NCBI GenBank assembly: GCA_038087875.1
Contig: CM075998.1
Location: forward strand, 1,612,084-1,676,000
Reading direction: 5' to 3'
Source of the DNA: Malacoraja senta
Taxonomy: Eukaryota
DNA: 63,917 bases
The notes beneath the pieces were generated by a model that saw only the letters and a list, made by a program, of their open reading frames with translations, had not been told where the DNA came from and ran no database searches. Positions within the stretch are counted from its first letter, which is position 1, and each line of letters opens with the position of its first letter. The translations under genes and the position numbers were made by a program. This document shows positions 12,757 to 56,351 of the stretch, piece after piece.

Positions 12757-13446
12757 TTACAGGGTGGTGAATCTCCCAGCTGTTGCAGTGGGTGTGGGGG
12801 TCATAGCTGTCATTGAGGTCATGGAGGTCATGGGGGTCATGGGAGTCATCATTCCCATCTTCACTCGGTTGCGGAGATTTGCATTCTGCTCCAGTAGGAG
12901 GTCATTGGTAGCCATCAGGTTTGACACCTGTTTTTGGAGATCCTCAACGCGCTTTTGGAGCATGAGATTCTCTGCCTTCAGAAACCGGTAGTCAGGTGCG
13001 CCTGGACTCGGCATTCCGTAGTCGTATACTTCAAACTGAATGCCCTCCTTCCTCCGCCTCTTCATGTGCGCGTCGTAGCCATCGTAATGGTCAGTGTCAT
13101 AACCTCTGGTGTAGAGGTCATCAAAGCGATCATATCTGTGTGCCAAGGGGGAAAACACTTGGCTGTGCGCCATACCTTGGTTTTCAAAACCATACTCGTC
13201 GCGCTTTACGTGCTGGAATTTACATTTGGGCCCTCTTTGACAGTCACCCTTTTGATAGTCGTGGCAGATCGGAATCTCACCTTTATTAACGGGTAGATCG
13301 GAAGATAAAAGGCCAAGGGTGGACATCTCATTAGCGTCTGGGTGGCGGAACTTGCAGCGCTTACCGCGGTTGCAGACGTTGCGCAGGAAGTCACGGCAAA
13401 TATCATCTGTACTGGGGCCAGCCTCCTCGGTGCCGTTATCTGGCAT
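12757..13446 (-). CDS. ZC3H10-like paralog A, 229 aa: two CCCH fingers, basic NLS-like KRRRK, coiled coil, no C-terminal low-complexity tail
   Basis: Intact single-exon ORF with CRDFLRNVCNRGKRCKFRH, CHDYQKGDCQRGPKCKFQH and ENLMLQKRVEDLQKQVSNLMATNDLLLEQNANLR, collinear with the 55161-56351 protein. Good start context AAAATGC. Acceptor TTTTCTTTTGCAG| at 13495. Confidence 0.9.
   Translation of the reverse strand: MPDNGTEEAGPSTDDICRDFLRNVCNRGKRCKFRHPDANEMSTLGLLSSDLPVNKGEIPICHDYQKGDCQRGPKCKFQHVKRDEYGFENQGMAHSQVFSPLAHRYDRFDDLYTRGYDTDHYDGYDAHMKRRRKEGIQFEVYDYGMPSPGAPDYRFLKAENLMLQKRVEDLQKQVSNLMATNDLLLEQNANLRNRVKMGMMTPMTPMTSMTSMTAMTPTPTATAGRFTTL
12796..12849 (-). repeat. coding 9-bp tandem repeat x6 (ATGACNNCN; MTP/MTS/MTA)
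   Basis: ATGACTCCC ATGACCCCC ATGACCTCC ATGACCTCA ATGACAGCT ATGACCCCC. Confidence 0.9.
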
Positions 13447-14897
13447 TTTTATAGATTATTTCTGCGCTGTTTAGCCAAGGCACTACGCAAGCAACTGCAA
13501 AAGAAAAAAAAGGCAGGTCTTTACAGAGAAAGAGCGATCGCTTACAAACTAACTGCTGCGCATTCTATAAAACACTGGAATTAGTGGCCGGGGTAGCAAG
13601 ATTAAGTGGCAGTTAGCAGGGAGGTCTGTGCAATATCTTTGCTTGCACAAGGAAAAAAAGTCACTGGTGAATGTTAAATCCACAAGTGATGTGCGCGCAA
13701 AAGTTATCTGCATTTTCAGGTTTATAAAGTTTTCCAACTCCAGAACAGATCACATCCTGATGTGCCATCAGAACTTCTTTAAAAAATGTGCACAAAATGT
13801 GTACTGATATTTATGGAAAAAAATTCAGTATCATGATCTCCAAACAGTGCCAGCCTAACTCATATGGCAGTGTTCCACACGCATTATCAGCTTTAGCCTA
13901 GAAAGCACACAACTTCACTGAAAAAAAATTTGAAGCCCCTTGTCCATACTTCCACAGGTAGCAGACAATTTATTGGAAACAACACCAACAAGCCCATTCC
14001 CAACATTTTTTCCCCTTTAAAGTACTTACACAGCAGAACAATATATATTGTACAACTAGCCTTGTTAAACCAGTACTCATTTCAATTACAAAGGAAAGAT
14101 TTCATCTGCACAAAACCTCTCCAATCAGGGGCTCACTACAGAGTTGCCCTGAAATAACTGGCACCATGGAAATCAGCAGGTGGTGTGAACATAAGTCTGT
14201 GACTTCAAATGTGAAGACAAGCTCAAGCAAGTTACTCCAGGTAGCTCCATGCAAATTACAGTATGCCAAACCACTTTTGTTTCAATTTTTGCACACTTGG
14301 CTTTCCTTTCATTTAACTTTGCACACTATTTTCTTCCATAAGGCAGGGCATTATTAATTACTAACAATGCAAAAATAAGAAATTGTACTTGTACAAAGTA
14401 TGTGACCACTTCTGTACTTGCCATCCGAGTTATAGAAATTTAACACTTCCTGGATTGCACGCATCCAATAACTACCACGTTTTCAATGCTACCAGAACAC
14501 TAGGCCTCTACTTTCTTCGTCAAGAAACACCTCAAACCACGTGAACACAAAATCCAAGTCCTCATTCAGAAAGTGTAAACTGTAATAATCAGACCTAGTC
14601 AAACGGCCAAAATAAAGAGGCAGAGCCATTTAGAATACTCTCCACTGCCTTCGACGTGCACGAATATCCAGACGCACGTACCCTCCTGGCACTCCAACTG
14701 CAGTAACTGATCACAAAGAGTAGCAATTCTTGCCCTTCGTGCAAGACTAAACATATCCAAAAACATTTTTGAAAACTATTTAAGTACAAACATTAAAAAA
14801 AAACGTTTTCGCTACCCCTCCCCCACATAACGGCTTGTTGTACCGTACATACCACGCAACGAGATAACGGGCAGTATTTGTAGGTGGTTTTCATCTT

Positions 14898-15595
14898 TTA
14901 TCGTCGATCTATATATCTAAGCATGTGCTTTGATGAACACAGACTCGGTCGCTCCAGATTGTAGCTGTGAGAAGCAGCAGGAACCTCACTATCGCCTTGC
15001 TTGGATTTAAGGCCGCAATGGCGCCTTTAGGCCTCGACTTCCTGTTACAATTAAAACGCCTCCCGGCCGCAGACAAATGCGGACTCTCTCCGCACAACGT
15101 TTGCACATTCAAATCGAGAATGCCACGGGTACATTAAAGTGCATGAAAACTCACAAACCAGGGCTGGGATACCTATACAGTTCGGCTCGGCTTCTTCCCT
15201 CACAGCTCCGACACAAAGAGGCTCTACGCAGGTCCTCCCAGTAAAGGGTAACTTCGTGACTGGTCCTCCGAGCCAAGAGGAAACCCCGGTCCCCTGCCGC
15301 CCGCCGGCTGAAGGCAACACCAACACCTTTGACGGCAGACACAGTGAAAAAGCCTGGCATTGCCTGGCAATACCAAAGAAATGATAAACAGCAAACCTTA
15401 ATGAAGTTTGGATCGGTCATTTAAAAATGCATCGTTTGAGAAAAATGCATTATTTTCTATGTGGCCTTCCAATAACATTTTAAATCAGTGAACCCCCTTT
15501 AGATTAAATCTAGAGTGCAGATGTATTCTAACCATAACCAATCCTTCCACATTTTAAACAGGAAAATGCAAGCACTGAAGTTTATTTAAACATCG
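14898..15595 (-). repeat. copy 1 of duplicated CpG-rich block containing a probable non-coding 5' exon (donor GTGAGG at 15203)
   Basis: Identical to 29714-30345 over 632 bp. Minus strand CTGGGAGGACCTGCGTAGAGCCTCTTTGTGTCGGAGCT|GTGAGG aligns to zc3h10 exon-1 end CTGGGAGGACCTGTGTGGTACTCGTTGTGTTTGGAGGA|GTGAGT. Confidence 0.85.
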
Positions 15596-15689
15596 TTTTC
15601 AACAGCCCAAGTTAAAATGGGCGAGTGTTTCAATTGGAATCAATATTACCAACAATCCGTCGTGGACCAACCACAATGAGCCAATAGCC

Positions 15690-16430: not shown

Positions 16431-16723
16431 CTCTCTGTATCAGTCCCAAACCCTCAGGTTTTTGAACACTTCTCACTTTGGTCTCCTGCTTTCCCTAGAA
16501 TTTAATTGGTCAACCAAATGCAGCCATGCTTACCTTCAATCACTGAGGTCCCATGCTTTGGAAGTTCCCCAAAATTTTCAATCCACCAAACTTGTAGTTC
16601 TGACAAAATTTTACAGTATTTATTTTAATATCCTCCCAGTTGGCCTGGCATCAATTCTTATAAACTGTCTCATGAGCCAGCAATCTCAATTTCATCTCAG
16701 GGAAGCAATCCAAAATATAATTC

Positions 16724-17300
16724 TCTGGATAGAAGGAATGGGTGACATTTCGGGTCGAGACCCTCCTTCAGACTGAGCAAGTCTGAAGGAGGGTCTCGAC
16801 CCAAAATGTCACCCATTCCTTCTACCCAAAGATGCTGCCTGTCCCGCTGAGTTACTCCACATTTAGTGTCTTATCTTCGGTTTAAACCAGCATCTGCAGT
16901 TCCTTCCTACAAGGAAATGCAGATGCTGGTTCACAAAAAAACAACACAAAGTAACTCAGGGGGTCAGGCAGCATCTGTGGAGAACGTGGATAGGTGATGT
17001 TTCGTGACCCTTCTTCAGACAAAGGAAGGGTCTGAGGAAGGGTCCCAACCAGAAACGTCTGTTCATGTTCTCCAGAGATGCTGCCTGACCTATTGAATTA
17101 CTCCAGCACTTTATTTCACAGAGAATACCCATGATTATTCACAGGTTGACATCAAATTATGAAATAGTCATAATGGCCATTTGAAGTGTTTGGCACCAAT
17201 ATCTCTATCCATTTTCTCAAGATGCTGCCCGAACCACTGAGTTATTACAGCACGATGTCCTTTTTTGTAAGCCAACATCTGCAGTTCCTTGTTTCTACTC
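16724..17300. mobile_element. cluster of Penelope-derived palindromic short elements
   Basis: Inverted arms ...gacatttcgggtcgagaccctccttcagact / agtctgaaggagggtctcgacccaaaatgtc..., with gatgctgcctgtcccgctgagttactcca and ccagcatctgcagttcct. Confidence 0.8.
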
Positions 17301-22449: not shown

Positions 22450-22828
22450 TCTGAGGATACATCATTCCCATCTTGATGATGCGGATCACTTTGCGGATGT
22501 CTCGATAGACATCTACTCAAGGAAAAAGCACAGGAAAATGGTACATGCTTTCCACATTGTAATTTTCACAGTACCTATATGGTTCTATCAGCAATTTGCA
22601 CCTGATCACTGGAGTCCAACCTTCTGTCAGTCAGGGCAGACTGGTATCCAGCATTTAATACGTAGGTCATCAGAAAAAAAGCCAAGCACAAAAACCTTAT
22701 TTGCCTTTGGGTGGTAGAACTTGCAGCGCTTGGCGCAGATGCAGAAGTTGCACGAGTTCTCAGCAAATATCAATGCTATTGGCAGTCATGTTGTTGCCAG
22801 TGTTGACTACATGATCTGTACCTGACAT
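22450..22828 (-). pseudogene. decayed ZC3H10-like pseudogene of the two-finger (paralog A) type
   Basis: From ATG 22828: MSGTDHVVNTGNNMTANSIDIC* / CAKRCKFYHPKANKVFVLGFFSDDLRIKCWIPVCPD*QK ... KMGMM. Acceptor TTTTCTTTTGCAG| at 22874 is homologous to the other three copies. Multiple stops and frameshifts. Confidence 0.85.
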
Positions 22829-23694
22829 TTTAGTTTAATTCAGCGCTGTTCATTCAAGATGCTCAGCAAGGAACTGCAAAAGAAAAACAAGTTATATCTT
22901 TACAAAGACAAAGGGAATTAACTGCAAATTTACCAATTCACCCATATCAGTGCTTAAATTTCCATCAATTTAATGGAAGAAGTACTTACAATAATAAACA
23001 ATAGAATATCAACAATCTACTCTGTCTCACATTTCTTCTTTCCACTCATGAAGACAACATAGGTGTATTAGATTTAGGGGTTTTCTTGTTCCTCACCCAG
23101 CTTTGCCCTACACGTGGGCCCCAAAACATCAACTATTAGGAAGCTATTCTCATGCAGGGACATCAAAGCTAAACATGCTCACACATGCAGTGCCAGAAGA
23201 GACCACTGGATTGTGATCTGGAACAAGACTCATTCAATTTTCACTCCCTGTTGGAGAACTCACCCAAAGATAACGTGACATTCCATACCACCAAGCTAGC
23301 TGTGATTAGATAACTCACAACAAGAGATAAGACTTGGGACTTATGGGCTTCATAGCTCAACTGGTCACCTTAAACTGAGTCGTCTGGGAATGTCTAATTA
23401 ATAAACAAGAGAAAAATAAAAGTCCATCCACGTACAATTTAGATTTGGAGGAAAGCTTAATTTTTTTTAAATCAGAAAATTTTGCCCATTTCTTTCTACT
23501 TACCTTATAAATTATACCTCCCAGGAGGACAACGTCACTCGTCTCATACTACCACTTTACTTGCCCCGTATTCCAGCAACTTCTCCTCACTTATTAACTT
23601 CCCTTTGATTCTCTTTGCCACTTACTTATAATTAGGGGGTGATTTAGAGTAGATAATTAACCTACCAAAAATACTTTAGGAAAATAAGAAGAAA

Positions 23695-29713: not shown

Positions 29714-30420
29714 TTATCGTCGATCTATATATCTAAGCATGTGCTTTGATGAACACAGACTCGGTCGCTCCAGATTGTAGCTGTGAGAAGCAGCAGGAAC
29801 CTCACTATCGCCTTGCTTGGATTTAAGGCCGCAATGGCGCCTTTAGGCCTCGACTTCCTGTTACAATTAAAACGCCTCCCGGCCGCAGACAAATGCGGAC
29901 TCTCTCCGCACAACGTTTGCACATTCAAATCGAGAATGCCACGGGTACATTAAAGTGCATGAAAACTCACAAACCAGGGCTGGGATACCTATACAGTTCG
30001 GCTCGGCTTCTTCCCTCACAGCTCCGACACAAAGAGGCTCTACGCAGGTCCTCCCAGTAAAGGGTAACTTCGTGACTGGTCCTCCGAGCCAAGAGGAAAC
30101 CCCGGTCCCCTGCCGCCCGCCGGCTGAAGGCAACACCAACACCTTTGACGGCAGACACAGTGAAAAAGCCTGGCATTGCCTGGCAATACCAAAGAAATGA
30201 TAAACAGCAAACCTTAATGAAGTTTGGATCGGTCATTTAAAAATGCATCGTTTGAGAAAAATGCATTATTTTCTATGTGGCCTTCCAATAACATTTTAAA
30301 TCAGTGAACCCCCTTTAGATTAAATCTAGAGTGCAGATGTATTCTCTGCAATATAACCATAACCAATCCTTCCACATTTTAAACAGGAAAATGCAAGCAT
30401 TGAAGTTTATTTAAACATCG
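29714..30420 (-). repeat. copy 2 of duplicated CpG-rich block / probable 5' exon of the 22.8-kb pseudogene
   Basis: Identical to 14898-15529 at offset 14816, then a 9-nt indel and one mismatch up to 30420. Confidence 0.85.
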
Positions 30421-31939
30421 ATTTGACTGCCCGTGTTAAAATAACAAAAGCAAACCCAATTGGAACGTGCCTTCCCCCTTTTTCCAACTGCTCTATGTTG
30501 TAATATAAACTTTGATGCACAAAACAGAAATGCTAGGCACTTTTGAAATCATGACAGTTTACGAACTGTTAATGTTTAAAGGAGCCGTTCTTGTATTCAT
30601 GATAAGAAATAGAACTCTCGGAATAAGGGGTAGTCATTTAGTACCAAGATGAGAAATTACTCCATTCTGAGGATATTGGGGTCTCAGTCATTGTGTTCAT
30701 TCAAAATGATCAATAGATTTCTGGATAATAAGAGAATTATGGATTTCTACAGCAAAACCAATAACCTGCGATCCAACCATTCTTGATGATTCGGCTTCTG
30801 GTCCACCAAATAATATTTGTCACACTACGCTTTCATTCACTGGGGCCCTGATTCCTGCTCTCGTCTTCATTTACCCAAGCCCCAGATTCCATCCTCTCTC
30901 CCACTCATTAAGGTCCCCTTTCCCCTTATACTCACCTGGGCCCCAGTTCCCACACTCCCTTCCACTTTACCTGATTCACTAGAACGTTTATCATACTGTA
31001 TAAGATTTAAAAAGTGAATGGAAAGAATGTTGAAGTAATTAATATCAATAACATCCAGTAGTCTGGAAATTCTGCCAGTTCAGCACCATCAAAACAATGA
31101 ATAAGCCGAATTGTCGAAATTTTACTGAATATAACTCAGGGAAATGGAGACAAAATGCAAAATTAACAAAGATCTTGATGAATGATAGAACAAAGCCAAA
31201 GCATCAATTGGCCTATTCCTGTTTCTTGTTGCTTTGATTTTATGAGTTTCAAAACTAAGAATATTTAAGTAAAAATATAAAACTAGATATATAATTGAAT
31301 AAAAATTATTACTGAACCAAACATAATTTTTTTTAAATTACTCACCTTCCCTTTTCCAGTGGTGTCCCAGATTCTGAGCTGCAGAATTTGAAAGGTGATT
31401 TCAGTTTAAATTGTGATAAATCTCAGCAGCGAGGAACCCCACCATCGGATTGTGTGTGGCTGTGTTCAGCCCTAACAAAATATATACTAAGTGCAGACAG
31501 CACTGTTCGTAGTAATAAAAATAATCAAGGAAGAAAAGTTAGTGCAGGCAAGTTGTGGTGCAGTAGTAGCTTTGGGAAGGTACCAGGGGCCCGTGCAGGC
31601 ATAATGTAGCAGCTATCCAACAATTGGAAGTGCATCAGGAAAAAAAAATCATGATCATGTTAGGAATTGGAGGGAATGGTAGTCAAACAGACTAATGCTC
31701 AAGGAATGTTTCCACAACTTTGAATTTTTGTATAAACTACCAACTGAATCTTGACTCATGACAGCAAGATAGATACAGTAGCCATGAAGAAATGTGGAGA
31801 AAACAAGGGCCAGATTAAACAGTGAAAAGTCAAAGTAGCTGCTCTTTCAGTATCTAATCCAAAGGGAGAGTAGGACTAATCTAACAATGAGAATGCTGCC
31901 ACTTGCTGAGCCCCAATCCTTGTAACAACACTTCCTCCT

Positions 31940-32905
31940 CAATAGCCACTCGTACAAGGGAAACTCAAGGCTGTGAGATCAGTTCCCTGCTCTATACCCA
32001 TGATTGTGTAGCCAAATCCATTTCCAACTCCATCTTTAACTTCGCTGATGTTAGACGAATTACGGGTAATAATGAGTCAGAGTATAGGAGGGAGATCGAT
32101 CGTCGGATTGCATGGTTGCAGAACAACAACCTTGCTCTCAACATTAGTAAAACCAAGGAACTGATTGTTGACCTTAGAAGAGGATGGCCAAGGATCCACA
32201 AACCTATCTCCATCAACGGGTCGGTGGTGGAGAGAGTTGACAACCTCAAGTTCCTGGGCGTGCATATCTCTGAAGATTCGATCTGGACCCAGCACATTGA
32301 TGCAATCATAAAGAAACCCTATCAATGCCTCTACTTCCTTGGAAGATTGAAGAGACTCGGTATGTCGACGAATACTCTTAAACTTCTACAAGTGTATGGT
32401 ACTGGTTGTATCATGGTTCAGCAACTCAAACCCTCAGGAACGAAGATTACAAAAAAGTGGTGGACACCACTCAGACCATCATGGGTATTGACCACCCCAC
32501 CGTCGAAGCGATCTATAGGAGGCGCTGCCTCAGAAATGCAGCCAGCATCATCAAGGACCTACACATCCCTGACCACACTCTGATTTCACTCATGCCATCA
32601 GGAAGGTGGTATAGGAATCTGAAAACTCTAATTCCAGGTTAAGGAACAAAATTTTCCCAACAATCATCAGGTTATGAACATTACAAACACCAAGTCCGTA
32701 ATGCAACCAAGACTACAAACTATCTTGGTTGCACTCGGGTCTTTGGGCTTTTGCTTTGTTTTGCACTTTAGTGACTTTTCCCCCCCATTTATTTAATTAT
32801 TTTTCATTTATTATATTATTTATCGAGTACTGCATTTACAAACCCGTTGCAAACCCAAGCAAGAATTTCCTTGTTCTCTCACATATGACAATTAAACACT
32901 CTTGA
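31940..32905 (+). mobile_element. decayed Rex1/Babar-type LINE RT fragment
   Basis: QGC..SSLLYTHDC, FNFAD, NNLALNISKTKELIVD, KFLGVHISED, LYFLGRLK, LMPSGRWYR. 3' end caattaaacactcttgact. Confidence 0.85.
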
Positions 32906-35445: not shown

Positions 35446-36006
35446 TCTACATATCAGAATATTTTAAAAAGAAAAGGGGACACCTGACAACTTGTACAGC
35501 ATCCTCCAGCATTCTCTTTCCTGGTAACATTGGAGCAATGCTTTATTTTTGTACACCAGCAATACTCCAATGTGCAAAGACAAAAAGCAAAGAATAAATG
35601 TTGCAAATTCCAATCATTTGACATCTTCCAGCTCCTTTTGTAGTGGATTTACTTTATTCTAAACTGAAGTTGTTAATTGCACAGATGTTGACGTGGTGTA
35701 TTATTAAATTTGCAGTGAATAACAAATTTGATATTTGCTTTGACTTTTACCTGGCCATTTGCTAAGATTTTGGTGGGGATTGATTTGAATTCTATTCAAA
35801 AACAAAGCAAAGATTATGAACAAGAGCAAGGTTAGGTAAAACTGGTAAAATGTTCTTCACTGCAACAACCACATTATGCTATCCTCCTATCCGGTGGAGT
35901 ACATCTAGCTACAGCTCAAAGCACAATGCAAGCAACAAGAGGAATCATTATCAAACAATAAGGGGACACAGCTATCATTTTAGGCCAGACTATAGATGGA
36001 GTCATG

Positions 36007-36200
36007 TGTAGGGAGGAACTGCAAATGCTGGTTTATACTGAAGATGGACACAAAAAGCTGGAGTAACTCAGCAGGACAGGCAGCATCCCTGGAGAAAAGG
36101 AATGTGTGACGTTTGGGGTCTCAACCCGAAATGTCACCTATTCCTTCGCTCCAGAGATGCTGCCTGTCCCGCTGAGTTACTCCAGCTTTTTGTGTCTATT
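36007..36200. mobile_element. Penelope-derived palindromic short element
   Basis: gacacaaaaagctggagtaactcagcaggacaggcagcatc / gatgctgcctgtcccgctgagttactccagctttttgtgtc. Confidence 0.8.
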
Positions 36201-39200: not shown

Positions 39201-40327
39201 AGATTTCTATATTTAACAGACGTATAGGAAGTCTTGCCATCAGTATACCTTGTAGAAGATAGTTGTTGGTTTTTTGCTTGATATAAATCATTAATACAAT
39301 TTGTAGTTTAGAGTGCTCTAATTTGAGAAATTTTGGAGCAAGACAGCTTAAAAGAACTTGATGATCATCAGTAGCTGCTCTTATTAACCCAAAGTGCTTT
39401 AGGGATCTACTTCCAATGCCCTCAATGTAAATTAGCCCCAAGTGGTTGCCTGGTTCATTGCTACATTTAAACAAAGAGCGCCATTATATTATAGTTTTGC
39501 ATTCCCTCCATCTGTGGGTAAAACTGTCATACTTATTGCATTTATGCTGCAAGCTAGTTCTCCAACAAGAGGGAGAAAAGGGAGCCATGGTGTCATTTTC
39601 TGCATTCTTTAATTTCTGCTCTGACCACAATCAAAGCAGCAGAGCATTTTATTTTTGGTTGGGTGGTATGAAGGAGTGAATGAGGGTAATTTTTTTGTAG
39701 TTTTATAATATTTCTTGCCTTTAAAAAAAGCGATAAAAAAAGTTGTAAAGGCACAATGTTCTTTAAGCGCATGTACAAGTGTTTTTAGAAAGCTGATGTT
39801 TTGATGTTGATTAAAACCAATTTTACATGAGCAAAAGAAAGCAGCCATATTTGCAGACAAAACCTTATCCCACTGCTGCTGCTGCAGTTGGAAAGCTTGA
39901 GTTGGTGTGGGCATTGCAATGCGCTGTCAAAGACTTTGCTTTCATTTGCACCAGAGCTTACAACATGAGCAAATTAAAAAAAGGTTTCAAAGAATTCAAA
40001 AACTTGAGTTCAATTCAATCTTTCTTCCCCCCACCAAAAGAAATTTGCGACATATATGGTTTGCAAATTGAAGCACATTTCAACTTCCATTTGCTACTAC
40101 TGCTGAGGTACAATTCTGCGCAACCTGTTCTCCAGACGAGTTCAACAGCAACAAATGAGACAGAAAAACACAAATTCTCATCATTTCATTTTTGACTTTG
40201 CAAAAGGGTTGGTGATGGTGAGACTCCCTCTTTAACAATCATACTTGACTCACTTTTTGCAATTGCCCTGGGAACCAATAAGAAATAGAAATCTCTTGTA
40301 AAGCTTCAAATGAAATGCCTTCTAATC

Positions 40328-41974
40328 TCAACTATCCTCTGCACGATAGAGGAACTTCATATTCTGTGATGCATTTGGATAACTGACCATTTGAGTCATG
40401 GTATAATTCATGGCAATTCCTGGGAGCGATTGCGTCACTGCCAATGGTGCAACTGAGATGGCAATTGTGCGATTGAAACTGGTGAAGCCACCCCTTGGGC
40501 ATAAGATGTCGAGAGAGCAGCACTAAGACAGGGTGGACTTTGGGATGTAGCTTCAGAACATAAAGCATTATGAGCTCTAGCTTGCGCTATCAATTCTTGA
40601 TGAGAAATAGACTGTGATCTCACGACCTGGTTGCTCAGGGTGGTGTGAGTCTCCACTATACTATGATTATAATTGGTAACAGCATGCATAGCTGGTGATT
40701 GTGTTGGGTCAGTCCCTGTGGTCAGGATCCCCAGTTTCACTTGCTTGCGTAAATCAGCATTTTGCTCCAGAAGTACCTCATTTGTAATCTTTAGGCTTGA
40801 CACCTGCTTCTTAAGCTCCTCATTGCGCATTCTGAGCATATGGTTTTCCTCCTCCAAAAAATTCATTTCAACTGGACGCAGACTGGGGATGCTGTAATCA
40901 AATACTTCAAACCGTAGACCCTCCGTTCTTTTCCTTTTTGGAGTTTGGTCAACATCACATTTCTCTGTCTCATACAGGTCATCCAAACGGTCATATCTAC
41001 AGATCTCAGGAGAAGCTTCTTTATTTTGTGACACATTTTCTATACTTGTCTTATCATTGTCATCACGTTTCAAGTGCTGGAATTTACACTTGGATCCTCT
41101 TCGACATTTGCCTTTTAGAAAGTCACGGCAGAATGGGACTTCCTTTGTAATAAGAGGCAAATTAGAGGGCGAGAGCCCAAATGTCACAGCCACTGTCTTT
41201 TGTAAGTGGGCAGGAAGCTTTCCTGTTTTATTGTAATAATTCTCTTCACCCTTTGTCCCGTGAATGAACGTGCAGTTCTCACGCGTACATTTGCTATTTT
41301 GAAAGTACTGACAAAAGATAGACTCATGCCGCATATCACCTACATCATAGGCTTCAACATTGTCCGGGTGAAAGTACCTGCAATTCTTACCACGGGTGCA
41401 GACATTGCGCAGAAAGTCACGACAAACATTCCGTTTGCTCTTGCTCGCATCAAATTTGCTATTATTCACGAAATTATCAGCGTCATCACTTAGGTCAACA
41501 TGGTTGGATACCTCAATATCATCTGGGTGAAAATATCTACAATTCTTACCACGATTGCAGAGATTGCGCAAAAAGTCTCGGCAAATATTCAGATTGCTTT
41601 TGTCAGCCTCATCATTGCCAAAGTTGACTAAATTATCAATGTCGTTCCTTACGTCAGCGAGGACAGAGGGCTCAATATCATCTGGATGGAAATACCTGCA
41701 ATTCTTACCACGGTTGCAGGTATTGCGCAGAAAGTCTCGGCAAATGTTCGATTTTGTTTTTGCCAGCTTCGTCATTAGTAATGATGACAAAATTATCAGT
41801 GTCGTTCCTTATGTCGGCAAGGTCGGAGGCCTCAACATTGTCAGGGTGGAAGTACCTGCAATTCTTACCACGAGTGCAGACATTGCGCAGAAAGTCTCGG
41901 CAAACATTCCGTTTGCTCTTGCCAGGCTCATATTTGCCGCTGTTGACTAAATTATCAGTGTCGTTCTCGGACAT
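40328..41974 (-). pseudogene. ZC3H10-like paralog B with six CCCH fingers (finger 1 x4); two 1-nt frameshifts in this sequence (young pseudogene or assembly indels)
   Basis: ORFs 41705-41974 and 40435-41790 join after removing one A at 41752-41761. The ZC3H10-like tail (QSLPGIAMNYTMTQMVSYPNASQNMK) continues in another frame after ~40467 to TGA at 40328. Acceptor TTTTTCTTTTACAG| at 42023. Coiled coil EEENHMLRMRNEELKKQVSSLKITNEVLLEQNADLR intact. Confidence 0.8.
41340..41974 (-). repeat. four coding tandem repeats of 159 bp (53 aa), each with a CCCH finger
   Basis: First Cys codons at 41902, 41742, 41583 and 41424 (spacing 160, 159, 159). Confidence 0.93.
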
Positions 41975-42504
41975 GCTTCCAGAATATTTCTGCGCTACTC
42001 AGCCAAGGCTCTCAATAAACAACTGTAAAAGAAAAAGAAGCCAGGTCTTTTACAATAAATAAGAGATTCATCTACAAAGTAATTTAGCTTAATCCCTTTC
42101 TCACAAAATATTGTAGCTGCTCCTACATCGTTAATTCAATAGAAAATACTTACAGCAAGTTACCAGTGGAACATCAAGGTATATATTAAAATTTAAAAAG
42201 AGATAAGCAGTATTAAGTCGGTAGTTTTGCTTTTAATATCGCAAATACCAATGCTTTGAGTTTTCCTGAAAAAGACACCGGCATAACAAAGTAAACATGT
42301 CTTCTTGATTATTGCACTCCAGATAGTACATGCATAGAAAAAATTTAATTCATACTGCAAGTGATTTTTTTAGTAATTTGTAAATGCAGGACATTAGAAT
42401 CAGTACTGGAAACAAATTCCTGAAGCAACATGTTAAAGAAGATTATGAAGAAGTAGTGCTGATTTAACTCACCAGAGTCAGCTGACCTCATTAAAAGCAT
42501 TGGA

Positions 42505-42716
42505 AGGAACTGCAGATGCTGGTTTAAATCGTAAACACAAAAACCTGGAGTAACTCAGTGGCTCAGACAGAATCTCTGGAGAAAAGGAATAGGTGACGTT
42601 TCGGGTCGAGACCCTAAGGATCTTCTGAAGAAGGGTCTCGACCCAAAATGGCACCTAATCCTTTTCTCCAAAGATACTGTCTGACTCGCTGAGTTACTGC
42701 AGCTTTTTATGTCTAT
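42505..42716. mobile_element. Penelope-derived palindromic short element
   Basis: gtgacgtttcgggtcgagaccct ... ctgaagaagggtctcgacccaaaat with flanking inverted arms. Confidence 0.8.
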
Positions 42717-43899
42717 CACGCTAAAAAGGTACCATTGCCACTTGAAAAGCTGATCTTTGTTTTCACATAGAATTCCACAACAGATGTAATTACCGTAACT
42801 ACAATGGACATTTTCTGCAATGCAGCAGAATTAAAAAAATAATCCTTTCAGAATTGGTCACTTAAATTCTACTTCATACACACATTTTGATCTGCCATCT
42901 GTGTGCAAGTACAATACCAGAGATGCTAAGGTAAATATCGACTTTAACAAATTAAAAATGGCAGGTATGTTTTGAACAGTAAATGAATATCTTTAAATGT
43001 ACAAATTAGCATGTTACAGGCAAATCAAGACATACTGCTGAAATATATATGCACAAAGGAGTATTCTTGAAGTGAAGACCCTGAAAAAGGTTAACATTTA
43101 TATTTGTAAAAGCCAATTTAAGCAAAATATACACTTTTAATAGAAACAATGTCAAGATAACTTTAAAGTAGCAATCTTGTATGATGATTTATAAAACAGT
43201 CAACAAAAAAAGTTCTCTTCAACATATATTGTCAGCTTCATTGCAAGCTGCATCGTTTTCAGGACTAAAGGCCATGGGTTCTCATGCTGTAATCCACATT
43301 CCTTTTCTATTGCAATGTCCGATATATTACTCCCTCCTTTATCATCGTTTATCAATGATAGCTCCCTATTCTTAATTTTTTTTAAATCTTCCATATTACC
43401 TGATCTTAAACTATGCCTACCACCCCGCACAAATAGCAAGGCTATTCGTAAAACATTGCGCCCCTCTTCCCTCCTTATTAGCTCTTAACTCTTTATTAAC
43501 ATCATGTGTATCAAACAACTTTTGAGTGCAGATCCCATTTCAAAAGGAAGGTAGTAGTTGGTTCTCCTTGCAGCTTTCCAGATATGATGCAAGAAAAAGT
43601 TTGCTGTTTGTCAATTCTCTTAACCACTCATTTTCTTTTTCTTTTAATAAAAGCAAAATTTACATTGATATAGTCAGTAGTCTTGTGAAATTTTTTCTTG
43701 TTCCTCCAAGACTCCTGCATCCTCACTTGGAGAAATCAAAACTGATTGCGCTGCTTCTTACTGTAATTCTATCTCAGGACCTCAAAATCAAAGAAATTAC
43801 TTCACCTTCTCTGATCGTATCGCATTCAAAGGGATTGATGTGCAGGAACAGGTTGGGTCAAGTCATTGGAGTTTTAAAGAACAAGAGACAATCTTATTG

Positions 43900-44787: not shown

Positions 44788-45535
44788 GTGTAGGAAGGAA
44801 CTACAGATGCTGGTTTAAACCGAATATAGACACAAAATGCTGGAGTAACTCAGCAGGACAGGCAGCATCTCTGGAGAGAAGGAACGGGTGACGTTTCGGG
44901 TCGAGACCCTTCTTCAGTGGGTCTCGACTTGAAACATCACCCATTCCTTCTCTCCAGAGATGCTGCCTGTCCCGCTGAGTTACTCCAGCATTTTGTGTCT
45001 ATCTTCACTAGAAAATTATAGTCAGAGCCTGATTGATGTCGGCTGCTGCAATTTTTTTTTTAAAGGGCTTGAAATAAATTTTATCCTGATCAACCAATTT
45101 ATCCACTTTTGCCAGACCTTTTTAATACATCCTCTACTTCTTTATGTTCAATGTTTCCAATACCACATTCTTCTATCTCAATGTCAATGCCCATATAACA
45201 CCAGTTTTCCTTGAACAGCTGCAAGTTATTCTTATGCAACTTTGCATATCTCAGATAGACACAAAAAGCTGGAGTAACTCAGTGGGACAGGCAACATCTC
45301 TGGAGAGAAGGAATAGGTAACGTTTCGGGTCGAGACACTTCTTCAGACTGCTCATCTCATATATCTCAGGCTGTTAATTGGTCTCTAATAAGACCTATTC
45401 TTTCCTGAAGAACGGTCTCGACCCGAAACGTTACCCATTCCTTCTCTCCAGAGATGCTGCCTGCCCCGCTGATTTACTCCAGCATTTTGTGTCTACCTTC
45501 GATTGAAACCAGCATCTGCAGTTCTTTCCTACACA
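44788..45535. mobile_element. two Penelope-derived palindromic elements; intact minimal hammerhead core on - at 44889-44917
   Basis: Minus strand CTGAAGA-A-GGGT-CTCG-ACCC-GAAA-C-GTC-A. A second pair of arms lies at 45255-45350 and 45405-45535. Confidence 0.8.
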
Positions 45536-47229
45536 TACCTATTCTTTCCTCTTTGATTATCTTGCACTAGTTCTATTTGCATTCAGGAGGATGTCTGATA
45601 ACACCATATCTGAGAGGAATACACAACTCTACTTCCTTCTAAGAGGTCTGTTACTGTCTGAATGATAAAGCATGAAAGCTGAATTGACTGAAATAAAATA
45701 TATAAATTATTGGTCTATTTTCTCAAAGATGGACAGAACATAATAATTATCTGACAAACTAATTCAAGTTTCACTCAACCTTCCAAGAACAGTATACTTA
45801 GCTTTTTTTTCTCCAAAATAACATTGACATATTGGATGGTGCAATTTTATTTTGTGTTGTGCTTTTGCGAGTTTTAAATTTTCAGTATTTGGGTCAATAA
45901 TCCTAACTAGTGTCTAATCTAATTTGTGATTCTGAACTCACAGCAGGCAAGGGAGGATCATTTTCTCACCTTATAAATACAGATGGCACAGTATGTTATA
46001 CTACTGTACTTGCCTGTGACTTGTTTTTACAATAGTGTAGCAATACAGCCTGATCAAAAACACAAAAGCCACATTTATACAGATGTATTCTTGGCATGTT
46101 CTGGCAGGACAAGGGTACTCAAAGGGCCCGGAATAGTCCAGGTTCATCCACAAACATTTGTTACTAAACTAACTACATCTGCAACAGAGCAATTACCTTT
46201 GTGAGATGGATGATAGCTATATTCTCAACAACATTTTTGTATGGCGAATTGTCCATGGGGTCACAACCAGCTGATGTCCATAACCCCACAACAAGGACAA
46301 TTGCAAATACAATATGAAGATGGTGGGCACCAGCAATTTGGAAATAGCCACAAACAGTCACGATCTCAAGAGGTCAACTGTTGAAAAGGGCAATGGAAGA
46401 AGCAAAGAGCAGCATAAGACCATAGACATATGAGCAGAATGAGGCCATTCTGCCATTCGATCATGGCTGATCTATTTTTCCCTCTCAACCCCAAGCAGCA
46501 AGTCCAGTTAGTTATGAGATCAGAGAAAGCAGAGATGAGCAAATTTGCATCTTCTCAGCGCACTACCTTCACCTACAGCAAGTGTCGAAGAGATATTCAG
46601 ACTTTAGTGGGTTCCTGTGTCGCACCAAGCAATGCATAATGAGGTACTGACCATCAAAGTATAATATCTCATCTGCTCAGGCAAAAGGCTGTCTCACATA
46701 TGGGCACCGGCAAAGGCAGGATTAACCCTGGCTGTGCGCCTCTGTAGCAATCAATATGTGCACCTAGTTTAACATGATCGCTTGGGTAACTCCTATGTGA
46801 ATGGCTATACCTCACAATTCATCACATTTAGGAGCGTTAAGGAGCCAAACCAAGCAGGACAAAGAGGGAGGAAGAATAGAATTGTAAAAGTATTCACATC
46901 GTGAAATGTTAATGTTAATCGCTAAATGGAAATGGTAACAAAATACAAATCTGTTATTGCCTCAAAGAATAGCAAAGAGAAAAGAAAATCTGATAATTTT
47001 CCATCCCTCATACCTTCAAGTGGCCAAGTGAACCTTGCTGATTATTCCTCTTGAGAGACAGAAGATGCAGTGACCTAAGGAGGAAGACGGTAAATAATGT
47101 CAAAGTGGCGATCATTGGGAAGTGAGTTTTTAAAATCCAGTAGCCAATGTTCTTTTTAAAAAGTCAACTGGTTAAACATTTATTGTTCAATCACATGTAC
47201 AGAACATAGTTTGAGTCCCATTGATTAAG

Positions 47230-48140
47230 TGGTTAAAAACAACCGGAGAAAGTACTGCACGACATGGAATGGGAAGGAAGGGCTCAACTTCACTCGCCAA
47301 ACACTGCTGAATTACACCATGGCAGGCCGCAAAATATTCACTATCATTTTAACAACGCATTTTGCATCTGACGTAACAGCGGTGATCTTCTTTTGCCCCA
47401 AACTCAGCGACATTCCCAAACGGGCACCGAATGCTGCACAACCACTCGGTTGAAGATGGGCAGCACCATCGGTCCATGATATCAAAAGGAAGTCGGCGCC
47501 TGGAGCAAACGGCTTCAATTAGTTTAAAAACGGACATATTTTTAATACGGATTTATAAATTCTGTGGGAATCCCGTGATTGGCAAACTACACTCATCTTG
47601 GACACTTTGTAATGGTTCATTCATTGGACTTTCATTCTGTGTCCGGATTTCACTATTACATTTTTTCCAAGACGGCCATAGGTTTTAACCTAACCACTAG
47701 ACGTGACTTGTCTTCCTTAAACAACCCTTGTTCTTAGGCTACCGCCATGAGGAAACCTGGATGTTGACAGTTTTGGTGGGGTTGCGACGGAAAGTTCTCG
47801 AACTTGGCGCGAGGCTTCAACTGCGCTCCTAGGCCTCAAGTGATTCACACGGACCGATATTAATTCCAGCGCACAGATGGAAACTAAACATTGTTCTATT
47901 TCTCAAAGATATATATTAATAATAACAGTTTACCAATATTGGAATAAACTCGATCAATAACAAATGGAGAAAGGACAACGCATTCACTTACACTATTTAA
48001 CCTCCCCCCCCCTCTCTCCTCTCTTGGTCCTCCAAACACGACGAGCTTCCATTCTGGTCCTCCGAGGCAAGAGCGACGGCAGAAGACGCTGTTGGGAGTG
48101 TCGCTGCAGGCAGCCGCCGGCAACGTCAATGTGCGGTGGG
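47230..48140. promoter_or_regulatory. CpG-enriched promoter region of zc3h10, possibly shared with the divergently oriented paralog B
   Basis: Local CpG enrichment in an AT-rich background. CRE-like TGACGTAA at 47369. Pyrimidine-rich initiator-like tract at ~48000-48025. Head-to-head gene arrangement. Confidence 0.55.
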
Positions 48141-48331
48141 ACTGTATTCCAGTACAATATGCTCAGGCGTTTACTTTGAAAAAATATCTTGAGGATATTC
48201 AATTGAACAACTTTAACTTGAAATACATCATCCCATTGTGAGAAATTAAGCATTCCAGCCAAGTGCAGCTATTTGACTCTAAGTCGCTCTTGTCTGGGAG
48301 GACCTGTGTGGTACTCGTTGTGTTTGGAGGA
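48000..48331 (+). other. zc3h10: probable non-coding first exon of zc3h10 (5' end uncertain)
   Basis: Donor GGA|GTGAGT at 48332. The 3' end is homologous to the duplicated blocks upstream of the paralogs. The intron would run to the acceptor at 55113. Confidence 0.6.
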
Positions 48332-54696: not shown

Positions 54697-54721
54697 CACA
54701 CACACACACACACACACACAC
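54697..54721 (+). repeat. (CA)n microsatellite
   Basis: Direct reading, ~12 units. Confidence 0.95.
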
Positions 54722-55160
54722 CTTTTTTTAGTTGTGTTGTTCAAAATGAAATAAGTGTGGCAAATTTTAAACAAAATCTTAATGGGCATAAGTAGCTGCA
54801 AAAATAAAATCTATAATTTACTAAAATAAATTAACCAATTATTGGGGAAGTAAATTGTGTCACTGATACAATGGGACCTGTTTACCCGAAGATCTAGAGT
54901 AGACAAATCGAAGGGAAGCTTATTTAATTTCTACAACTAATTTTGTAATAATATTTGATGCTGACACCAGACATACACAATTAGAAGCCTTTATTTTTCC
55001 CACGCAAACATCGTTCAGCTTGCTGAGCTCAAAATGCAGTGGTTCAAGTGACACTTGCTTTGTGGGTGACTTCCTCCTTCTCTGTAAAGACGTACCTTGA
55101 TTTTCTTTTTCAGATGTTTTTCTATACAGTTGCTGAGAAGCACAATAATAGTCTGTGAAG

Positions 55161-56351
55161 ATGCCGGATAAAGATAATTTATTTAACAGAGGTAATGACG
55201 AGGCTGGCCACAGCTCAGATGATATTTGCCGTGACTTCCTGCGCAATGTGTGCAAACGTGGCAAGCGCTGCAAGTTCTACCACCCCGACATTAATGAGGT
55301 GTCCGACTTGGGTGTTAAAAAAAATGAGTTTGTCTTTTGCCATGATTATCAGAACAAGGAGTGCACTCGTATCAACTGCAAGTTTATTCATGGGACAAAG
55401 GAAGATGAGGAACATTACAAAAAATCAGGAGAGCTTCCCCAACGTCTACGCGTTACGGTGGCCATGGGTCTTGGCCTTTCACCTTCTGACCTTTCTTTTA
55501 AAAAAGGCGAGGTTCCAATCTGCCGAGATTACCTGAAAGGGGACTGTCAACGAGGATCTAAATGTAAATTTCGACACTTAAAACGTGATGAATACGAGTA
55601 TGAAAATAGAACTTTGGAGAGATTGGCACGAGAACAAGTGCTCTCTCCTGTCGTGCGACGATACGACCCGTTTGATGACCTCTATGAGACTGATCGCTAT
55701 ATTGACTATGACCATATTCTAAAGAGGAGAAGAGTGGATGGCTTACGATTTGAAAGTTATGATTTTAGTCTCTCAAACTCACGTCCTGTGGACTATCGAT
55801 TTCTAGAAGAGGAGAATCTGATGCTCCGAAAGAGAGTTGAGGAACTGAAAAAGCAGATCTCGAATTTGATGGCAACTAATGAGGTGCTCTTGGAGCAAAA
55901 TGCACATTTCCGCAACCAAACCAAGTTGGTGACACTGACTTCCACTCCCACAGCGACAGAGCAAATACTGTCAGCACCAACTGTGGCTACGCTGACCAAC
56001 TACAACCATGGTATAGCACAGACTCACACCACATTGAGCAGCCAAGCACTTCAACCACGACCAGTCATCCAGCAAGATCTAGTGGCAACTGCTTCTGCTG
56101 CACCGCCTAACAATGCTGCACCAACAGCACAACATCTTAACCCTGAAATTGCTTCCCTCCCTGCTGCACTGGCCCAGACCATCGCTCAGGGAATGGCACC
56201 TCCAGTATCCACGGTGGCTGTTTCTGTTGCACCAGTGGCAGTATCAATTGCACAAGCACTGCCAGGAATCACCATAAGCCATGCCACCACTCCAATGGTT
56301 ACATATCCAATTGCGTCACAGAGTATGAGAATAACGGCAATTCCTCACTGA
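55161..56351 (+). CDS. zc3h10: zinc finger CCCH domain-containing protein 10, 396 aa, single coding exon
   Basis: True ATG at 55161 (the track start at 55155 is GTG). Three fingers: CRDFLRNVCKRGKRCKFYH, CHDYQNKECTRINCKFIH, CRDYLKGDCQRGSKCKFRH. Coiled coil LEEENLMLRKRVEELKKQISNLMATNEVLLEQNA. C-terminus TTPMVTYPIASQSMRITAIPH matches vertebrate ZC3H10. Confidence 0.97.
   Translation: MPDKDNLFNRGNDEAGHSSDDICRDFLRNVCKRGKRCKFYHPDINEVSDLGVKKNEFVFCHDYQNKECTRINCKFIHGTKEDEEHYKKSGELPQRLRVTVAMGLGLSPSDLSFKKGEVPICRDYLKGDCQRGSKCKFRHLKRDEYEYENRTLERLAREQVLSPVVRRYDPFDDLYETDRYIDYDHILKRRRVDGLRFESYDFSLSNSRPVDYRFLEEENLMLRKRVEELKKQISNLMATNEVLLEQNAHFRNQTKLVTLTSTPTATEQILSAPTVATLTNYNHGIAQTHTTLSSQALQPRPVIQQDLVATASAAPPNNAAPTAQHLNPEIASLPAALAQTIAQGMAPPVSTVAVSVAPVAVSIAQALPGITISHATTPMVTYPIASQSMRITAIPH

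What the first reader, a model, noticed from the sequence alone, without database searches (positions are those of the whole stretch)
12757..56351. Local expansion of normally single-copy ZC3H10 into a four-member cluster with 2, 2 (dead), 6 and 3 CCCH fingers
Seen: a canonical zc3h10 on + and three inverted, diverged copies. All four have a homologous intron acceptor ~45-50 nt before the ATG, so they arose by DNA-level duplication and not retroposition. The RNA/DNA-binding module was remodelled in opposite directions (finger 2 deleted in A, finger 1 amplified x4 in B), while the coiled coil and basic KR patch are retained. Known: mammalian ZC3H10 is to my knowledge single-copy, binds RNA (GCAGCG-type motif, pri-miRNA processing) and regulates mitochondrial/thermogenic genes. 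Inference: a lineage-specific family whose members could combine through the shared coiled coil with different nucleic-acid specificity or avidity. I know of no description of this.
Basis: partly seen in the sequence, partly recalled or inferred. Interest (0 to 1): 0.75.

Follow-up and report, generated by a model that had tools for sequence, protein, structure and literature searches.

The report
Ancient ZC3H10 paralog cluster in skate
This skate window holds the normal ZC3H10 gene, two expressed, selection-constrained paralogs with remodelled zinc fingers and one dead relic, but the cluster is about as old as cartilaginous fishes and is already auto-annotated in many sharks and rays, so it is not a recent local expansion.

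Summary
The window carries canonical ZC3H10 (+, 3 CCCH fingers), paralog A (-, 2 fingers, finger 2 deleted), paralog B (-, finger 1 x4 plus fingers 2 and 3) and a roughly 300-bp dead relic D. All four share a 5'-UTR intron acceptor 45-50 nt before the ATG.

A has a syntenic ortholog in the chimaera Callorhinchus and is 97-99% identical between sharks and rays. B, with the same four repeats, occurs in sharks and rays. RefSeq already calls these proteins "ZC3H10-like". A fifth conserved member (F, about 280 aa) probably lies just beyond the window start, and an unlinked 2-finger family (E) also exists.

Spliced transcripts of a close relative confirm the introns of A and B. dN/dS is 0.2-0.28 for A and B against 0.055 for the canonical gene.

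B looks frameshifted here, but contigs of a public sequencing run of the same organism lack that base, which sits in a homopolymer, so it is probably an assembly error. A second frameshift that cuts off B's conserved tail is real and shared with related skates.

A fold model supports an in-register zipper pairing of A with the canonical protein. I found no paper on this family. The scan holds no earlier ZC3H10 finding apart from a note on this same stretch.

The parts
55161..56351 (+). Canonical ZC3H10 (C) coding sequence: 396 aa with 3 CCCH fingers, a basic patch plus leucine zipper (residues 187-255) and the conserved C-terminal tail. Exon 2 starts at about 55114, after the acceptor.
   Evidence: (93% identity to shark and skate ZC3H10-like). 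It groups with the chondrichthyan canonical clade in the tree. Synteny with MIP/aqp0 comes and note s1-195567.
40435..41974 (-). Paralog B coding sequence as assembled. ATG at 41974, four finger-1 repeats, finger 2, finger 3, zipper, and a stop at 40435 after the real tail frameshift near 40467. The extra T at 41752 is a probable assembly indel.
   Evidence: P0201: 512 aa, 98% identical, reads through repeat 2 and has the same ...HHWQ stop; the same-organism contig lacks the base at 41752.
41320..41968 (-). Array of four 159-nt (53-aa) repeats in B, each holding one finger-1 copy. Repeats R1 and R4 are most alike, as are R2 and R3.
   Evidence: spacings of 159 and 160, the 160 containing the extra base; repeats cluster by position across six B sequences from five species (two of them are the window and a close relative). 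One search gives the coordinates.
40331..40467 (-). Former C-terminal tail of B, now out of frame and untranslated in this skate lineage. It is still recognisable: ...VTQSLPGIAM...MVSYPNASQNMKF...
   Evidence: The frameshift is also present in X1, X25 and P0201. X25 carries 5- and 7-nt deletions inside this stretch.
47014..47161 (-). B exon 1 (non-coding) with donor AAG|GTATGA. The intron runs 47013-42025 and exon 2 starts at 42024.
   Evidence: The X25 contig has a loose end exactly at 42024.
39531..42024 (-). B exon 2, covering the 50-nt 5' UTR, the coding sequence and about 0.9 kb of 3' UTR.
   Evidence: Contigs L004-L010 of a close relative align to it at 97-98% identity.
12757..13446 (-). 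Paralog A coding sequence: 229 aa with fingers 1 and 3, basic patch plus zipper (residues 128-196), and a short Met/Thr/Pro-rich end ...AGRFTTL. It lacks finger 2 and the ZC3H10 tail.
   Evidence: dN/dS is 0.18-0.25.
9524..13494 (-). A exon 2, covering the 48-nt 5' UTR, the coding sequence and about 3.2 kb of 3' UTR.
   Evidence: Contigs L013-L017, which encode P0228 (227 of 229 residues identical to A), align to it at 95.6%.
15152..15300 (-). A exon 1 (non-coding) with donor TAG|GTATCC. It lies inside a CpG-rich block. The intron runs 15151-13495.
   Evidence: L013 nt 1-149 align at 97.3%. The donor sequence is shown and CpG observed/expected of 0.8-1.0.
22617..22916 (-). Relic D. It keeps the acceptor (CAG ending at 22874), the ATG at 22828, decayed fingers 1 and 3 with stops and a frame change, and the A-type finger-2 deletion (a single LG). 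Nothing homologous follows.
   Evidence: (65.6% identity to A over 311 nt).
29714..30442 (-). Second copy of A's exon-1 and promoter block (the first is 14898-15618). It lies 7 kb upstream of D, is 714/720 identical, and contains a 631-bp exact run.
47400..48200 (.). CpG-rich stretch between B exon 1 and the canonical gene. It is a candidate shared, divergent promoter for B and C. This is an inference only: exon 1 of C was not located.
   Evidence: CpG observed/expected is 0.87-0.95. The stretch is conserved with the Narcine region upstream of B.

Best explanation
The window covers most of an old, conserved tandem cluster of ZC3H10 paralogs that is typical of cartilaginous fishes.

Shown:
- The canonical gene (C) sits head-to-head with B, D and A.
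- A and B are single-coding-exon genes with a spliced 5'-UTR intron. They are expressed in a close relative and are under purifying selection.
- A (fingers 1 and 3, zipper, no tail) predates the chimaera/elasmobranch split. B (finger 1 x4, fingers 2 and 3, zipper) predates the shark/ray split.
- D is a decayed duplicate of the A lineage.
- B's apparent frameshift after repeat 1 is probably an assembly indel. B's tail has truly been lost in this skate lineage.

Inferred:
- The cluster arose by tandem DNA duplication, followed by a microhomology-flanked deletion of finger 2 in A and unequal crossing-over that amplified finger 1 in B.
- The paralogs dimerise through the nearly identical leucine zipper. 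The family would then supply partners that differ in RNA-binding valency (0, 1 or 4 finger-1 plus finger-2 units) and in whether they carry the C-terminal tail.
- The short A would act as a tail-less, RNA-blind modulator of the canonical factor. B would act as a multivalent RNA binder.
For: Loci and fingers.

Shared acceptor.

Splicing and expression in relatives:
- B contigs L005-L009 join 47161-47014 to 42024, and X25 has a loose end at 42024.
- A contig L013 joins 15300-15152 to 13494. P0228, the protein it encodes, is assembled in 62 blocks of the contig collection.

Orthologs:
- B in Heptranchias, Pristiophorus, Chiloscyllium and Narcine.
- A in 11 elasmobranch species at 90% identity or more, and 97-99% between sharks and rays.
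- Callorhinchus A lies 19 kb from canonical ZC3H10, in the same divergent orientation, with MIP beside it.

Other evidence:
- Trees. Repeat tree.
- dN/dS: A 0.18-0.25, B 0.20-0.28, C 0.055.
- Assembly indel: the same-organism contig X1 has 0 substitutions over 3 kb but lacks one base at 41752, 40060 and 40164, all in homopolymers. The repeat spacing is 159 and 160.
- Zipper: a and d positions are nearly identical in A, B and C.
- The complex model gives 0.66 against a best control of 0.01, with at least 89% of contacts shared between runs and partner pLDDT of at least 71. In the tool's calibration this mark was reached by 51 of 78 solved complexes and 2 of 108 mismatched pairs.
- Published domain roles: fingers 1 and 2 bind RNA, and the basic-zipper region binds DNA (PMC6911170).
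Against: - No RNA data from the window's own species were obtained. The only raw-read RNA run (X39) laid no reads at 6% sampling.
- Expression evidence comes from Logan contigs, which give neither tissue nor level.
- X1 may come from the same individual as the assembly, so a heterozygous frameshift cannot be ruled out.
- The base of the gnathostome part of the tree is unresolved. The A/B/F clade may therefore predate the split from bony vertebrates rather than being a chondrichthyan invention.
- No B-type gene was seen within the 40 kb read around the Callorhinchus cluster.
- Coiled coils score high easily, and the tool warns that close relatives of a true partner also pass. The model therefore does not show that A pairs with C in cells.
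- The functional roles of A and B are inference only.
Confidence: 0.8

Rival explanations
1. A recent, species- or lineage-local expansion of a gene that is otherwise single-copy.
For: Mammals and most bony vertebrates show one ZC3H10. The copies are clustered within 44 kb.
Against: - Orthologs of A occur in the chimaera in conserved synteny.
- A, B and F are on the same chromosome in Narcine, and the cluster tables place several members on shared contigs in Heptranchias, Rhinoraja, Hypanus and Chiloscyllium.
- Paralogs within the window are only 61-68% identical at the nucleotide level.
- B's repeats group by position across species.
Confidence: 0.03
2. A and/or B are unexpressed or decaying pseudogenes in this genome, with B broken by two frameshifts.
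For: As assembled, B has a frameshift after repeat 1 and a premature stop that removes the conserved tail. A has evolved faster in skates than in other elasmobranchs: 92% against 97-99% identity.
Against: - The first frameshift is absent from the same-organism contig and from relatives.
- The tail-less B of related skates is spliced and assembled from about 21 contigs.
- dN/dS is 0.24-0.28 even on the short skate branches.
- All CCCH ligands are intact in A and B.
Confidence: 0.05
3. The A/B/F lineage is an ancient gnathostome (or 2R-era) paralog that bony vertebrates lost, rather than a duplication specific to cartilaginous fishes.
For: In the first tree the A/B/F clade falls outside a clade of all canonical ZC3H10 plus E (support 93/72). 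E is sister to the chondrichthyan canonical gene, which shows that duplicates arose at different times.
Against: - With more sequences the basal node collapses to a trichotomy.
- Fast-evolving paralogs are prone to long-branch attraction toward the root.
- The tandem position next to the canonical gene fits local duplication.
- No bony-vertebrate member of this clade appeared in three protein searches.
Confidence: 0.25
4. The extra copies arose by retroposition of ZC3H10 mRNA, given the intronless coding sequence.
For: The whole coding sequence is one exon in every copy.
Against: - The canonical gene itself has a single coding exon.
- All copies keep the 5'-UTR intron acceptor at the same place, and A and B are spliced there.
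- The copies are tandem and collinear with Narcine, including their introns and upstream regions.
Confidence: 0.02

Closest known systems
Mammalian ZC3H10 (Zc3h10): RNA-binding CCCH protein and DNA-binding activator of thermogenic and mitochondrial genes
   Same: The window's copy C is its ortholog. It has three CCCH fingers, a KRRR patch, a leucine-zipper heptad run and a conserved tail. It is 65-66% identical to mammalian proteins and lies next to MIP/aqp0. A and B keep the basic patch and zipper, the region reported to bind DNA (PMC6911170).
   Different: A lacks finger 2 and the tail. Finger 2, together with finger 1, is reported as required for RNA binding. B carries four finger-1 copies and, in this skate lineage, has lost the tail. 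Neither architecture is described for mammalian ZC3H10.
RefSeq and UniProt automatic models named 'zinc finger CCCH domain-containing protein 10-like' in sharks, rays and chimaera
   Same: These are the orthologs of A (215-229 aa), B (545-557 aa), F (279-282 aa) and E (298-329 aa).
   Different: They are unnamed and uncharacterised predictions. Nothing in the searched literature groups them, dates them or notes their domain pattern. No NCBI-named model of skate B turned up in the searches: the near-identical B cluster holds only Logan contigs.
Truncated zipper partners in bZIP families, such as C/EBP-beta LIP, ICER and small MAFs (recalled from my own knowledge, not tested here)
   Same: A and F keep the dimerisation and basic region but lack the long C-terminal part of the canonical protein. 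This is the layout of natural dominant-negative or specificity-switching partners.
   Different: This is a functional analogy only. Pfam bZIP_1 does not reach its cut-off, and the basic patch is about 25 residues from the zipper rather than contiguous with it.
Multi-CCCH RNA binders such as Unkempt (6 fingers), ZC3H14/Nab2 (5-7) and MBNL (4) (recalled from my own knowledge)
   Same: B has six tandem CCCH fingers. This would allow multivalent recognition of longer or repeated RNA motifs.
   Different: The only link is the generic CCCH fold. B's array is four copies of one finger, made by amplification of a 159-nt unit.

Membership tests
ZC3H10 orthology group (canonical gene) | Three tandem CCCH fingers (C-x8-C-x5-C-x3-H type, with finger 2 as C-x7-C-x4-C-x3-H) | tested here: met
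   C has 3 intact fingers. By the same test A has 2, B has 6 and D has none intact, so A, B and D are family relatives and not orthologs.
ZC3H10 orthology group (canonical gene) | Groups with the canonical clade in a tree and keeps conserved synteny | tested here: met
   C groups with shark, skate and chimaera canonical ZC3H10 (support 96/87). MIP lies beside Callorhinchus ZC3H10, and aqp0 is noted 10 kb beyond this window. A, B and F form a separate clade (97/91).
ZC3H10 family in the wide sense | KR-rich basic patch followed by a leucine-zipper heptad run (L-x6-L, five to six times, with Asn at 'a' positions) | tested here: met
   It is present and nearly identical at the a and d positions in A, B and C. 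It is absent from D.
ZC3H10 family in the wide sense | Conserved C-terminal tail ending ...MV(T/S)YP.ASQ.MR... | tested here: not met
   Only C has it. A ends ...AGRFTTL. B's tail is out of frame here and in related skates, but is intact in Narcine and in sharks.
ZC3H10 family in the wide sense | One coding exon preceded by a 5'-UTR intron whose acceptor lies 45-50 nt before the ATG | tested here: met
   Spliced contigs show it for A and B. For C and D it rests on sequence homology of the acceptor only.
bZIP transcription factors (Pfam PF00170) | Profile match above the curated cut-off, with the basic region contiguous with the zipper | tested here: not met
   bZIP_1 scores 16 bits against a cut-off of 27.6 for C and B. 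The basic patch sits about 25 residues upstream of the zipper. PMC6911170 calls the region bZIP on functional grounds.
Processed retrogene | Loss of the parental introns | tested here: not met
   The 5'-UTR intron is kept and spliced in A and B.
Pseudogene | Disrupted frame, relaxed constraint, no orthologs | tested here: not met
   This row applies to A and B, which fail the test: dN/dS 0.18-0.28, orthologs across Chondrichthyes, spliced transcripts in relatives, and B's first frameshift absent from same-organism contigs. D does fit the definition, with stops, a frame change and truncation.

The most novel reading that the evidence does not exclude
Cartilaginous fishes keep a ZC3H10 family of at least five members that covers every combination of domains: finger 2 present or absent, tail present or absent, plus a version with finger 1 amplified four times.
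- C: finger 2 and tail.
- E: no finger 2, tail.
- F: finger 2, no tail.
- A: neither.
- B: finger 1 x4.

All members share one zipper and would form a combinatorial dimer network linking RNA binding to promoter binding. The near-invariance of A (97-99% between sharks and rays) would then mark an essential regulator that bony vertebrates lack, and which nobody has studied.
Probability: 0.3. Interest if true: 0.55.

Novelty: new variant of a known kind. Interest (0 to 1): 0.42.

Why it matters
ZC3H10 is studied in mammals as a single gene with two roles, binding RNA through its fingers and binding DNA through its basic-zipper region. Cartilaginous fishes have split and recombined these modules into separate, strongly conserved genes.

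This gives natural separation-of-function variants, such as a finger-2-less, tail-less form and a form with four finger-1 copies. These could help show which domain does what.

For genome annotation, three points matter:
- The "single-copy" assumption fails outside bony vertebrates.
- The apparent frameshift in B is best read as a homopolymer error of this assembly.
- Skates have truly lost B's conserved tail.

Tried and rejected
- **Exitron or cDNA-mediated loss of finger 2.** I checked the canonical DNA at the deletion boundaries. There is a weak GT at the 5' side but no AG at the 3' side, and there is an LG/LG microhomology instead, so a slippage-type deletion is more likely. The E family lost finger 2 with slightly different boundaries (LGLG kept, against LG in A and D). 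This points to independent losses.
- **Exact-sequence look-ups** of the window's own C and A proteins found no record.
- **The raw-read RNA run X39** laid no reads at 6% sampling, which is no test. X2 laid nothing.
- **Exon 1 of the canonical gene** could not be located. No transcript was available, and blastn with B's exon 1 found no paralogous exon 1 elsewhere in the window.
- **No B-type gene** appeared in the roughly 40 kb read around the Callorhinchus cluster. Whether the chimaera lacks B or keeps it elsewhere is open.
- **Whether the Callorhinchus 248-aa gene corresponds to D, to B or to a chimaera-specific copy** was not resolved. It groups with A at 97/93 but on a long branch.
- **The first look-up of sequencing runs attempts for B** failed because the server was busy.

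Full report
**1. What is in the window**

A six-frame ORF list and tblastn of the three long ORFs against the window give four ZC3H10-related loci.

- **C (canonical).** The coding sequence runs 55161-56351 on the plus strand and gives 396 aa from the ATG. The ORF tool starts it at an upstream GTG.
- **A.** The coding sequence runs 13446-12757 on the minus strand and gives 229 aa.
- **B.** It lies on the minus strand, with its ATG at 41974 and a stop at 40435.
- **D.** This is a weak match at about 22617-22916 on the minus strand.

Pfam finds CCCH fingers in A, B and C and nothing in D. C has three fingers. A has fingers 1 and 3.

Codon-level comparison shows that A lacks 54 codons, which hold finger 2 and its helical linker. 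The gap lies between two Leu-Gly codon pairs, so it is a microhomology-flanked deletion.

B has four 159-nt repeats, each encoding one finger-1 copy with its leader, followed by fingers 2 and 3.

D keeps the acceptor, an ATG at 22828 and a finger-1 remnant whose Arg codon has become TGA. It also has a frame change and a finger-3 remnant with two stops. D shows the same single-LG junction as A, and nothing homologous follows. D is therefore a truncated, dead copy of the A lineage.

The 200 nt upstream of all four ATGs align across a polypyrimidine tract and a CAG acceptor 45-50 nt before the ATG.

**2. Two frame problems in B**

Read from its ATG, B leaves frame after repeat 1, and its conserved tail is out of frame.

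I laid contigs of four public runs on 39400-42400. The contig from the same organism (X1) matches with no substitution over 3 kb. It lacks one base at 41752, 40060 and 40164, and all three sites are homopolymer runs.

The related organism (X25) and the 512-aa protein P0201 of a close relative also lack the base at 41752, and P0201 reads repeat 2 in frame. The repeat spacing in the window is 159 and then 160, and the 160 holds the extra base. A heterozygous variant cannot be excluded.

The second change is a 1-bp loss near 40467. It is present in X1, X25 and P0201, all of which end ...HHWQ. X25 has further 5- and 7-nt deletions inside the former tail. The loss of B's tail is therefore real and shared by these skates. 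Narcine and the sharks keep the tail.

**3. Gene structure and expression**

Seven Logan contigs (assemblies of public sequencing runs) encode P0201. Five of them map with their first 30-145 nt at window 47161-47014 and the rest from 42024 downward at 97-98% identity. The donor is AAG|GTATGA. The X25 contig has a loose end exactly at 42024. B therefore has a non-coding exon 1, a 4.99-kb intron and an exon 2 with about 0.9 kb of 3' UTR.

For A, the protein P0228 (227 of 229 residues identical) is found in 62 blocks of the contig collection. Its longest contig maps nt 1-149 to 15300-15152 and the rest to 13494-9526. The donor is TAG|GTATCC. A therefore has a non-coding exon 1 in a CpG-rich block, a 1.66-kb intron and about 3.2 kb of 3' UTR.

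This shows that both genes are transcribed and spliced in close relatives. It also shows that the shared acceptor is a real intron boundary, which rules out retroposition. I obtained no RNA evidence from the window's own species.

**4. Age and spread**

The canonical protein is 93% identical to ZC3H10-like proteins of Chiloscyllium and Rhinoraja.

Orthologs of B are 545-557 aa long, with the same four repeats. They occur in Heptranchias, Pristiophorus, Chiloscyllium and Narcine. A tree of the 24 repeat units groups them by position (R1 with R4, R2 with R3) and not by species, so the amplification predates the shark/ray split.

The 90%-identity cluster of A holds RefSeq proteins from these species:
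- Cetorhinus and Rhincodon
- Mobula and Hypanus
- two Chiloscyllium species
- two Scyliorhinus species
- Heptranchias, Rhinoraja and Narcine

Between sharks and rays A is 97-99% identical, which is higher than for the canonical gene. The skate sequences have diverged faster, at 92-95%.

Callorhinchus has a 215-aa ortholog of A at 68% identity. On scaffold MU249857.1 the order is as follows:
- canonical ZC3H10 on the minus strand at 860.2-861.4 kb, with MIP beside it
- a 248-aa two-finger gene on the plus strand at 871.6 kb
- the A ortholog on the plus strand at 880.2 kb

This is the same divergent layout as in the window.

**5. More members than four**

The cluster look-up revealed a further paralog, F. 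It is 279-282 aa long, has three fingers and a short GRF-type end like A, and is present in 20 named elasmobranch species.

In Narcine the three genes lie on one strand of chromosome CM072953.1:
- B at 54,624,315
- A at 54,679,005
- F at 54,706,625

Window 2241-4131 aligns to the Narcine DNA 7.4-9.6 kb upstream of F. This places F about 5 kb beyond the window start. That position is an inference, because I cannot read outside the window.

An unlinked family, E (298-329 aa), has two fingers and a full tail. It occurs in sharks, rays and chimaera.

The family thus shows every combination:

| Member | Finger 2 | Tail |
|---|---|---|
| C | yes | yes |
| E | no | yes |
| F | yes | no |
| A | no | no |
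| B | yes, with finger 1 x4 | yes (lost in this skate lineage) |

**6. Phylogeny and selection**

Maximum-likelihood trees recover each group with high support. A joins the Callorhinchus genes (97/93), B joins F (90/85), and A, B and F form one clade (97/91). E is sister to the chondrichthyan canonical genes (98/91).

The position of the A/B/F clade relative to bony-vertebrate ZC3H10 is unresolved: it was 93/72 in the first tree and a trichotomy in the second. I therefore cannot say whether the clade arose in the chondrichthyan stem or earlier.

Pairwise dN/dS is 0.18-0.25 for A, 0.20-0.28 for B and 0.055 for C. This is purifying selection that is weaker than on the canonical gene.

**7. How it probably works**

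Published work on mouse Zc3h10 assigns RNA binding to fingers 1 and 2. It assigns DNA binding (5'-TYCCNG-3') to a basic-zipper region that works without the fingers (PMC6911170).

In A, B and C the KRRR-type patch and six heptads are retained. The a and d positions are almost identical, including three to four Asn residues at 'a' positions.

A complex model of C 187-255 with A 128-196 gives a parallel, in-register zipper. Details:
- score 0.66, best control 0.01
- at least 89% of contacts shared between runs
- partner pLDDT of at least 71
- the mark was reached by 51 of 78 solved complexes and 2 of 108 mismatched pairs in the tool's calibration

This supports binding but does not show it. Coiled coils and close relatives of a true partner pass this test easily.

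My inference is that the members dimerise with one another:
- A, and probably F, act as tail-less partners. A also lacks the finger-1/finger-2 RNA-binding unit.
- B offers four finger-1 copies for multivalent RNA contact.

None of this was tested.

**8. Known or new**

Full-text searches found 191 papers naming ZC3H10. Of the three that also mention sharks, none, by title and abstract, is about cartilaginous fishes. The proteins exist only as automatic "ZC3H10-like" models. The scan's index holds no other ZC3H10 finding.

I rate this a new variant of a known kind. The gene family is real, old and undescribed, but it is not the young local expansion that was proposed, and its function is still conjecture.

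**9. Side observation**

The block holding A's exon 1 (14898-15618) is repeated at 29714-30442, 7 kb upstream of D. The two copies match at 714 of 720 positions and share a 631-bp exact run, although the coding parts of A and D are only 65.6% identical. Gene conversion, a recent segmental copy or an assembly duplication all remain possible.

Noticed in passing
window 14898-15618 and 29714-30442: This direct repeat matches at 714 of 720 positions and holds a 631-bp exact run. It contains A's exon 1 and its CpG-rich promoter. The second copy lies 7 kb upstream of relic D, whose coding part is only 65.6% identical to A. Gene conversion, a recent copy or an assembly duplication are all possible. 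Transcripts cannot tell the two exon-1 copies apart.
   Followed up: partly
window 40060, 40164, 41752: The assembly has three single extra bases, all in homopolymer runs, compared with short-read-type contigs of the same organism that otherwise match with no substitution over 3 kb. This points to homopolymer indel errors in the assembly, which could create false frameshifts elsewhere.
   Followed up: yes
window 55114-55160: Exon 2 of the canonical gene begins with an upstream ATG directly after the acceptor (cag|ATGTTTTTC...). It opens a short uORF of about 14 codons that ends just before the main ATG.
   Followed up: no
window 12757-13446 compared with orthologs: Paralog A is 97-99% identical between whale shark, sevengill shark, catshark, stingray and electric ray. 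It is only 92-95% identical in skates (this window and Rhinoraja), so A has evolved faster in the skate lineage.
   Followed up: partly
L002:16042-16230 (Callorhinchus MU249857.1, about 886.3 kb): There is a weak extra match to the zipper region of ZC3H10 (33% identity, E 1e-5) about 6 kb downstream of the chimaera A ortholog. It may be another relic copy.
   Followed up: no
Rhinoraja longicauda proteins P0002 and P0003: Two near-identical canonical ZC3H10-like proteins of 397 aa lie on the same 11.5-Mb contig. This is either a recent tandem copy or an assembly duplicate in that skate.
   Followed up: no
window 31903-32583 (+): This 226-aa ORF looks like the C-terminal part of a LINE reverse transcriptase, sitting between D and B. 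That is judged by eye and was not searched.
   Followed up: no
window 16722-17117, 33682-33805, 36006-36199, 42502-42717, 44788-45534, 57340-57495: A dispersed family of short elements with palindromic (MITE-like) structure, 70-92% identical to one another, lies in the introns and spacers of the cluster. Similar pieces occur in the Callorhinchus locus L002 at about 5050-5143.
   Followed up: no
Ambystoma proteins P0144 and P0203: The axolotl carries diverged 'ZC3H10-like' proteins (325 and 382 aa) that group with amphibian ZC3H10. So ZC3H10 is not strictly single-copy in every bony vertebrate either.
   Followed up: no
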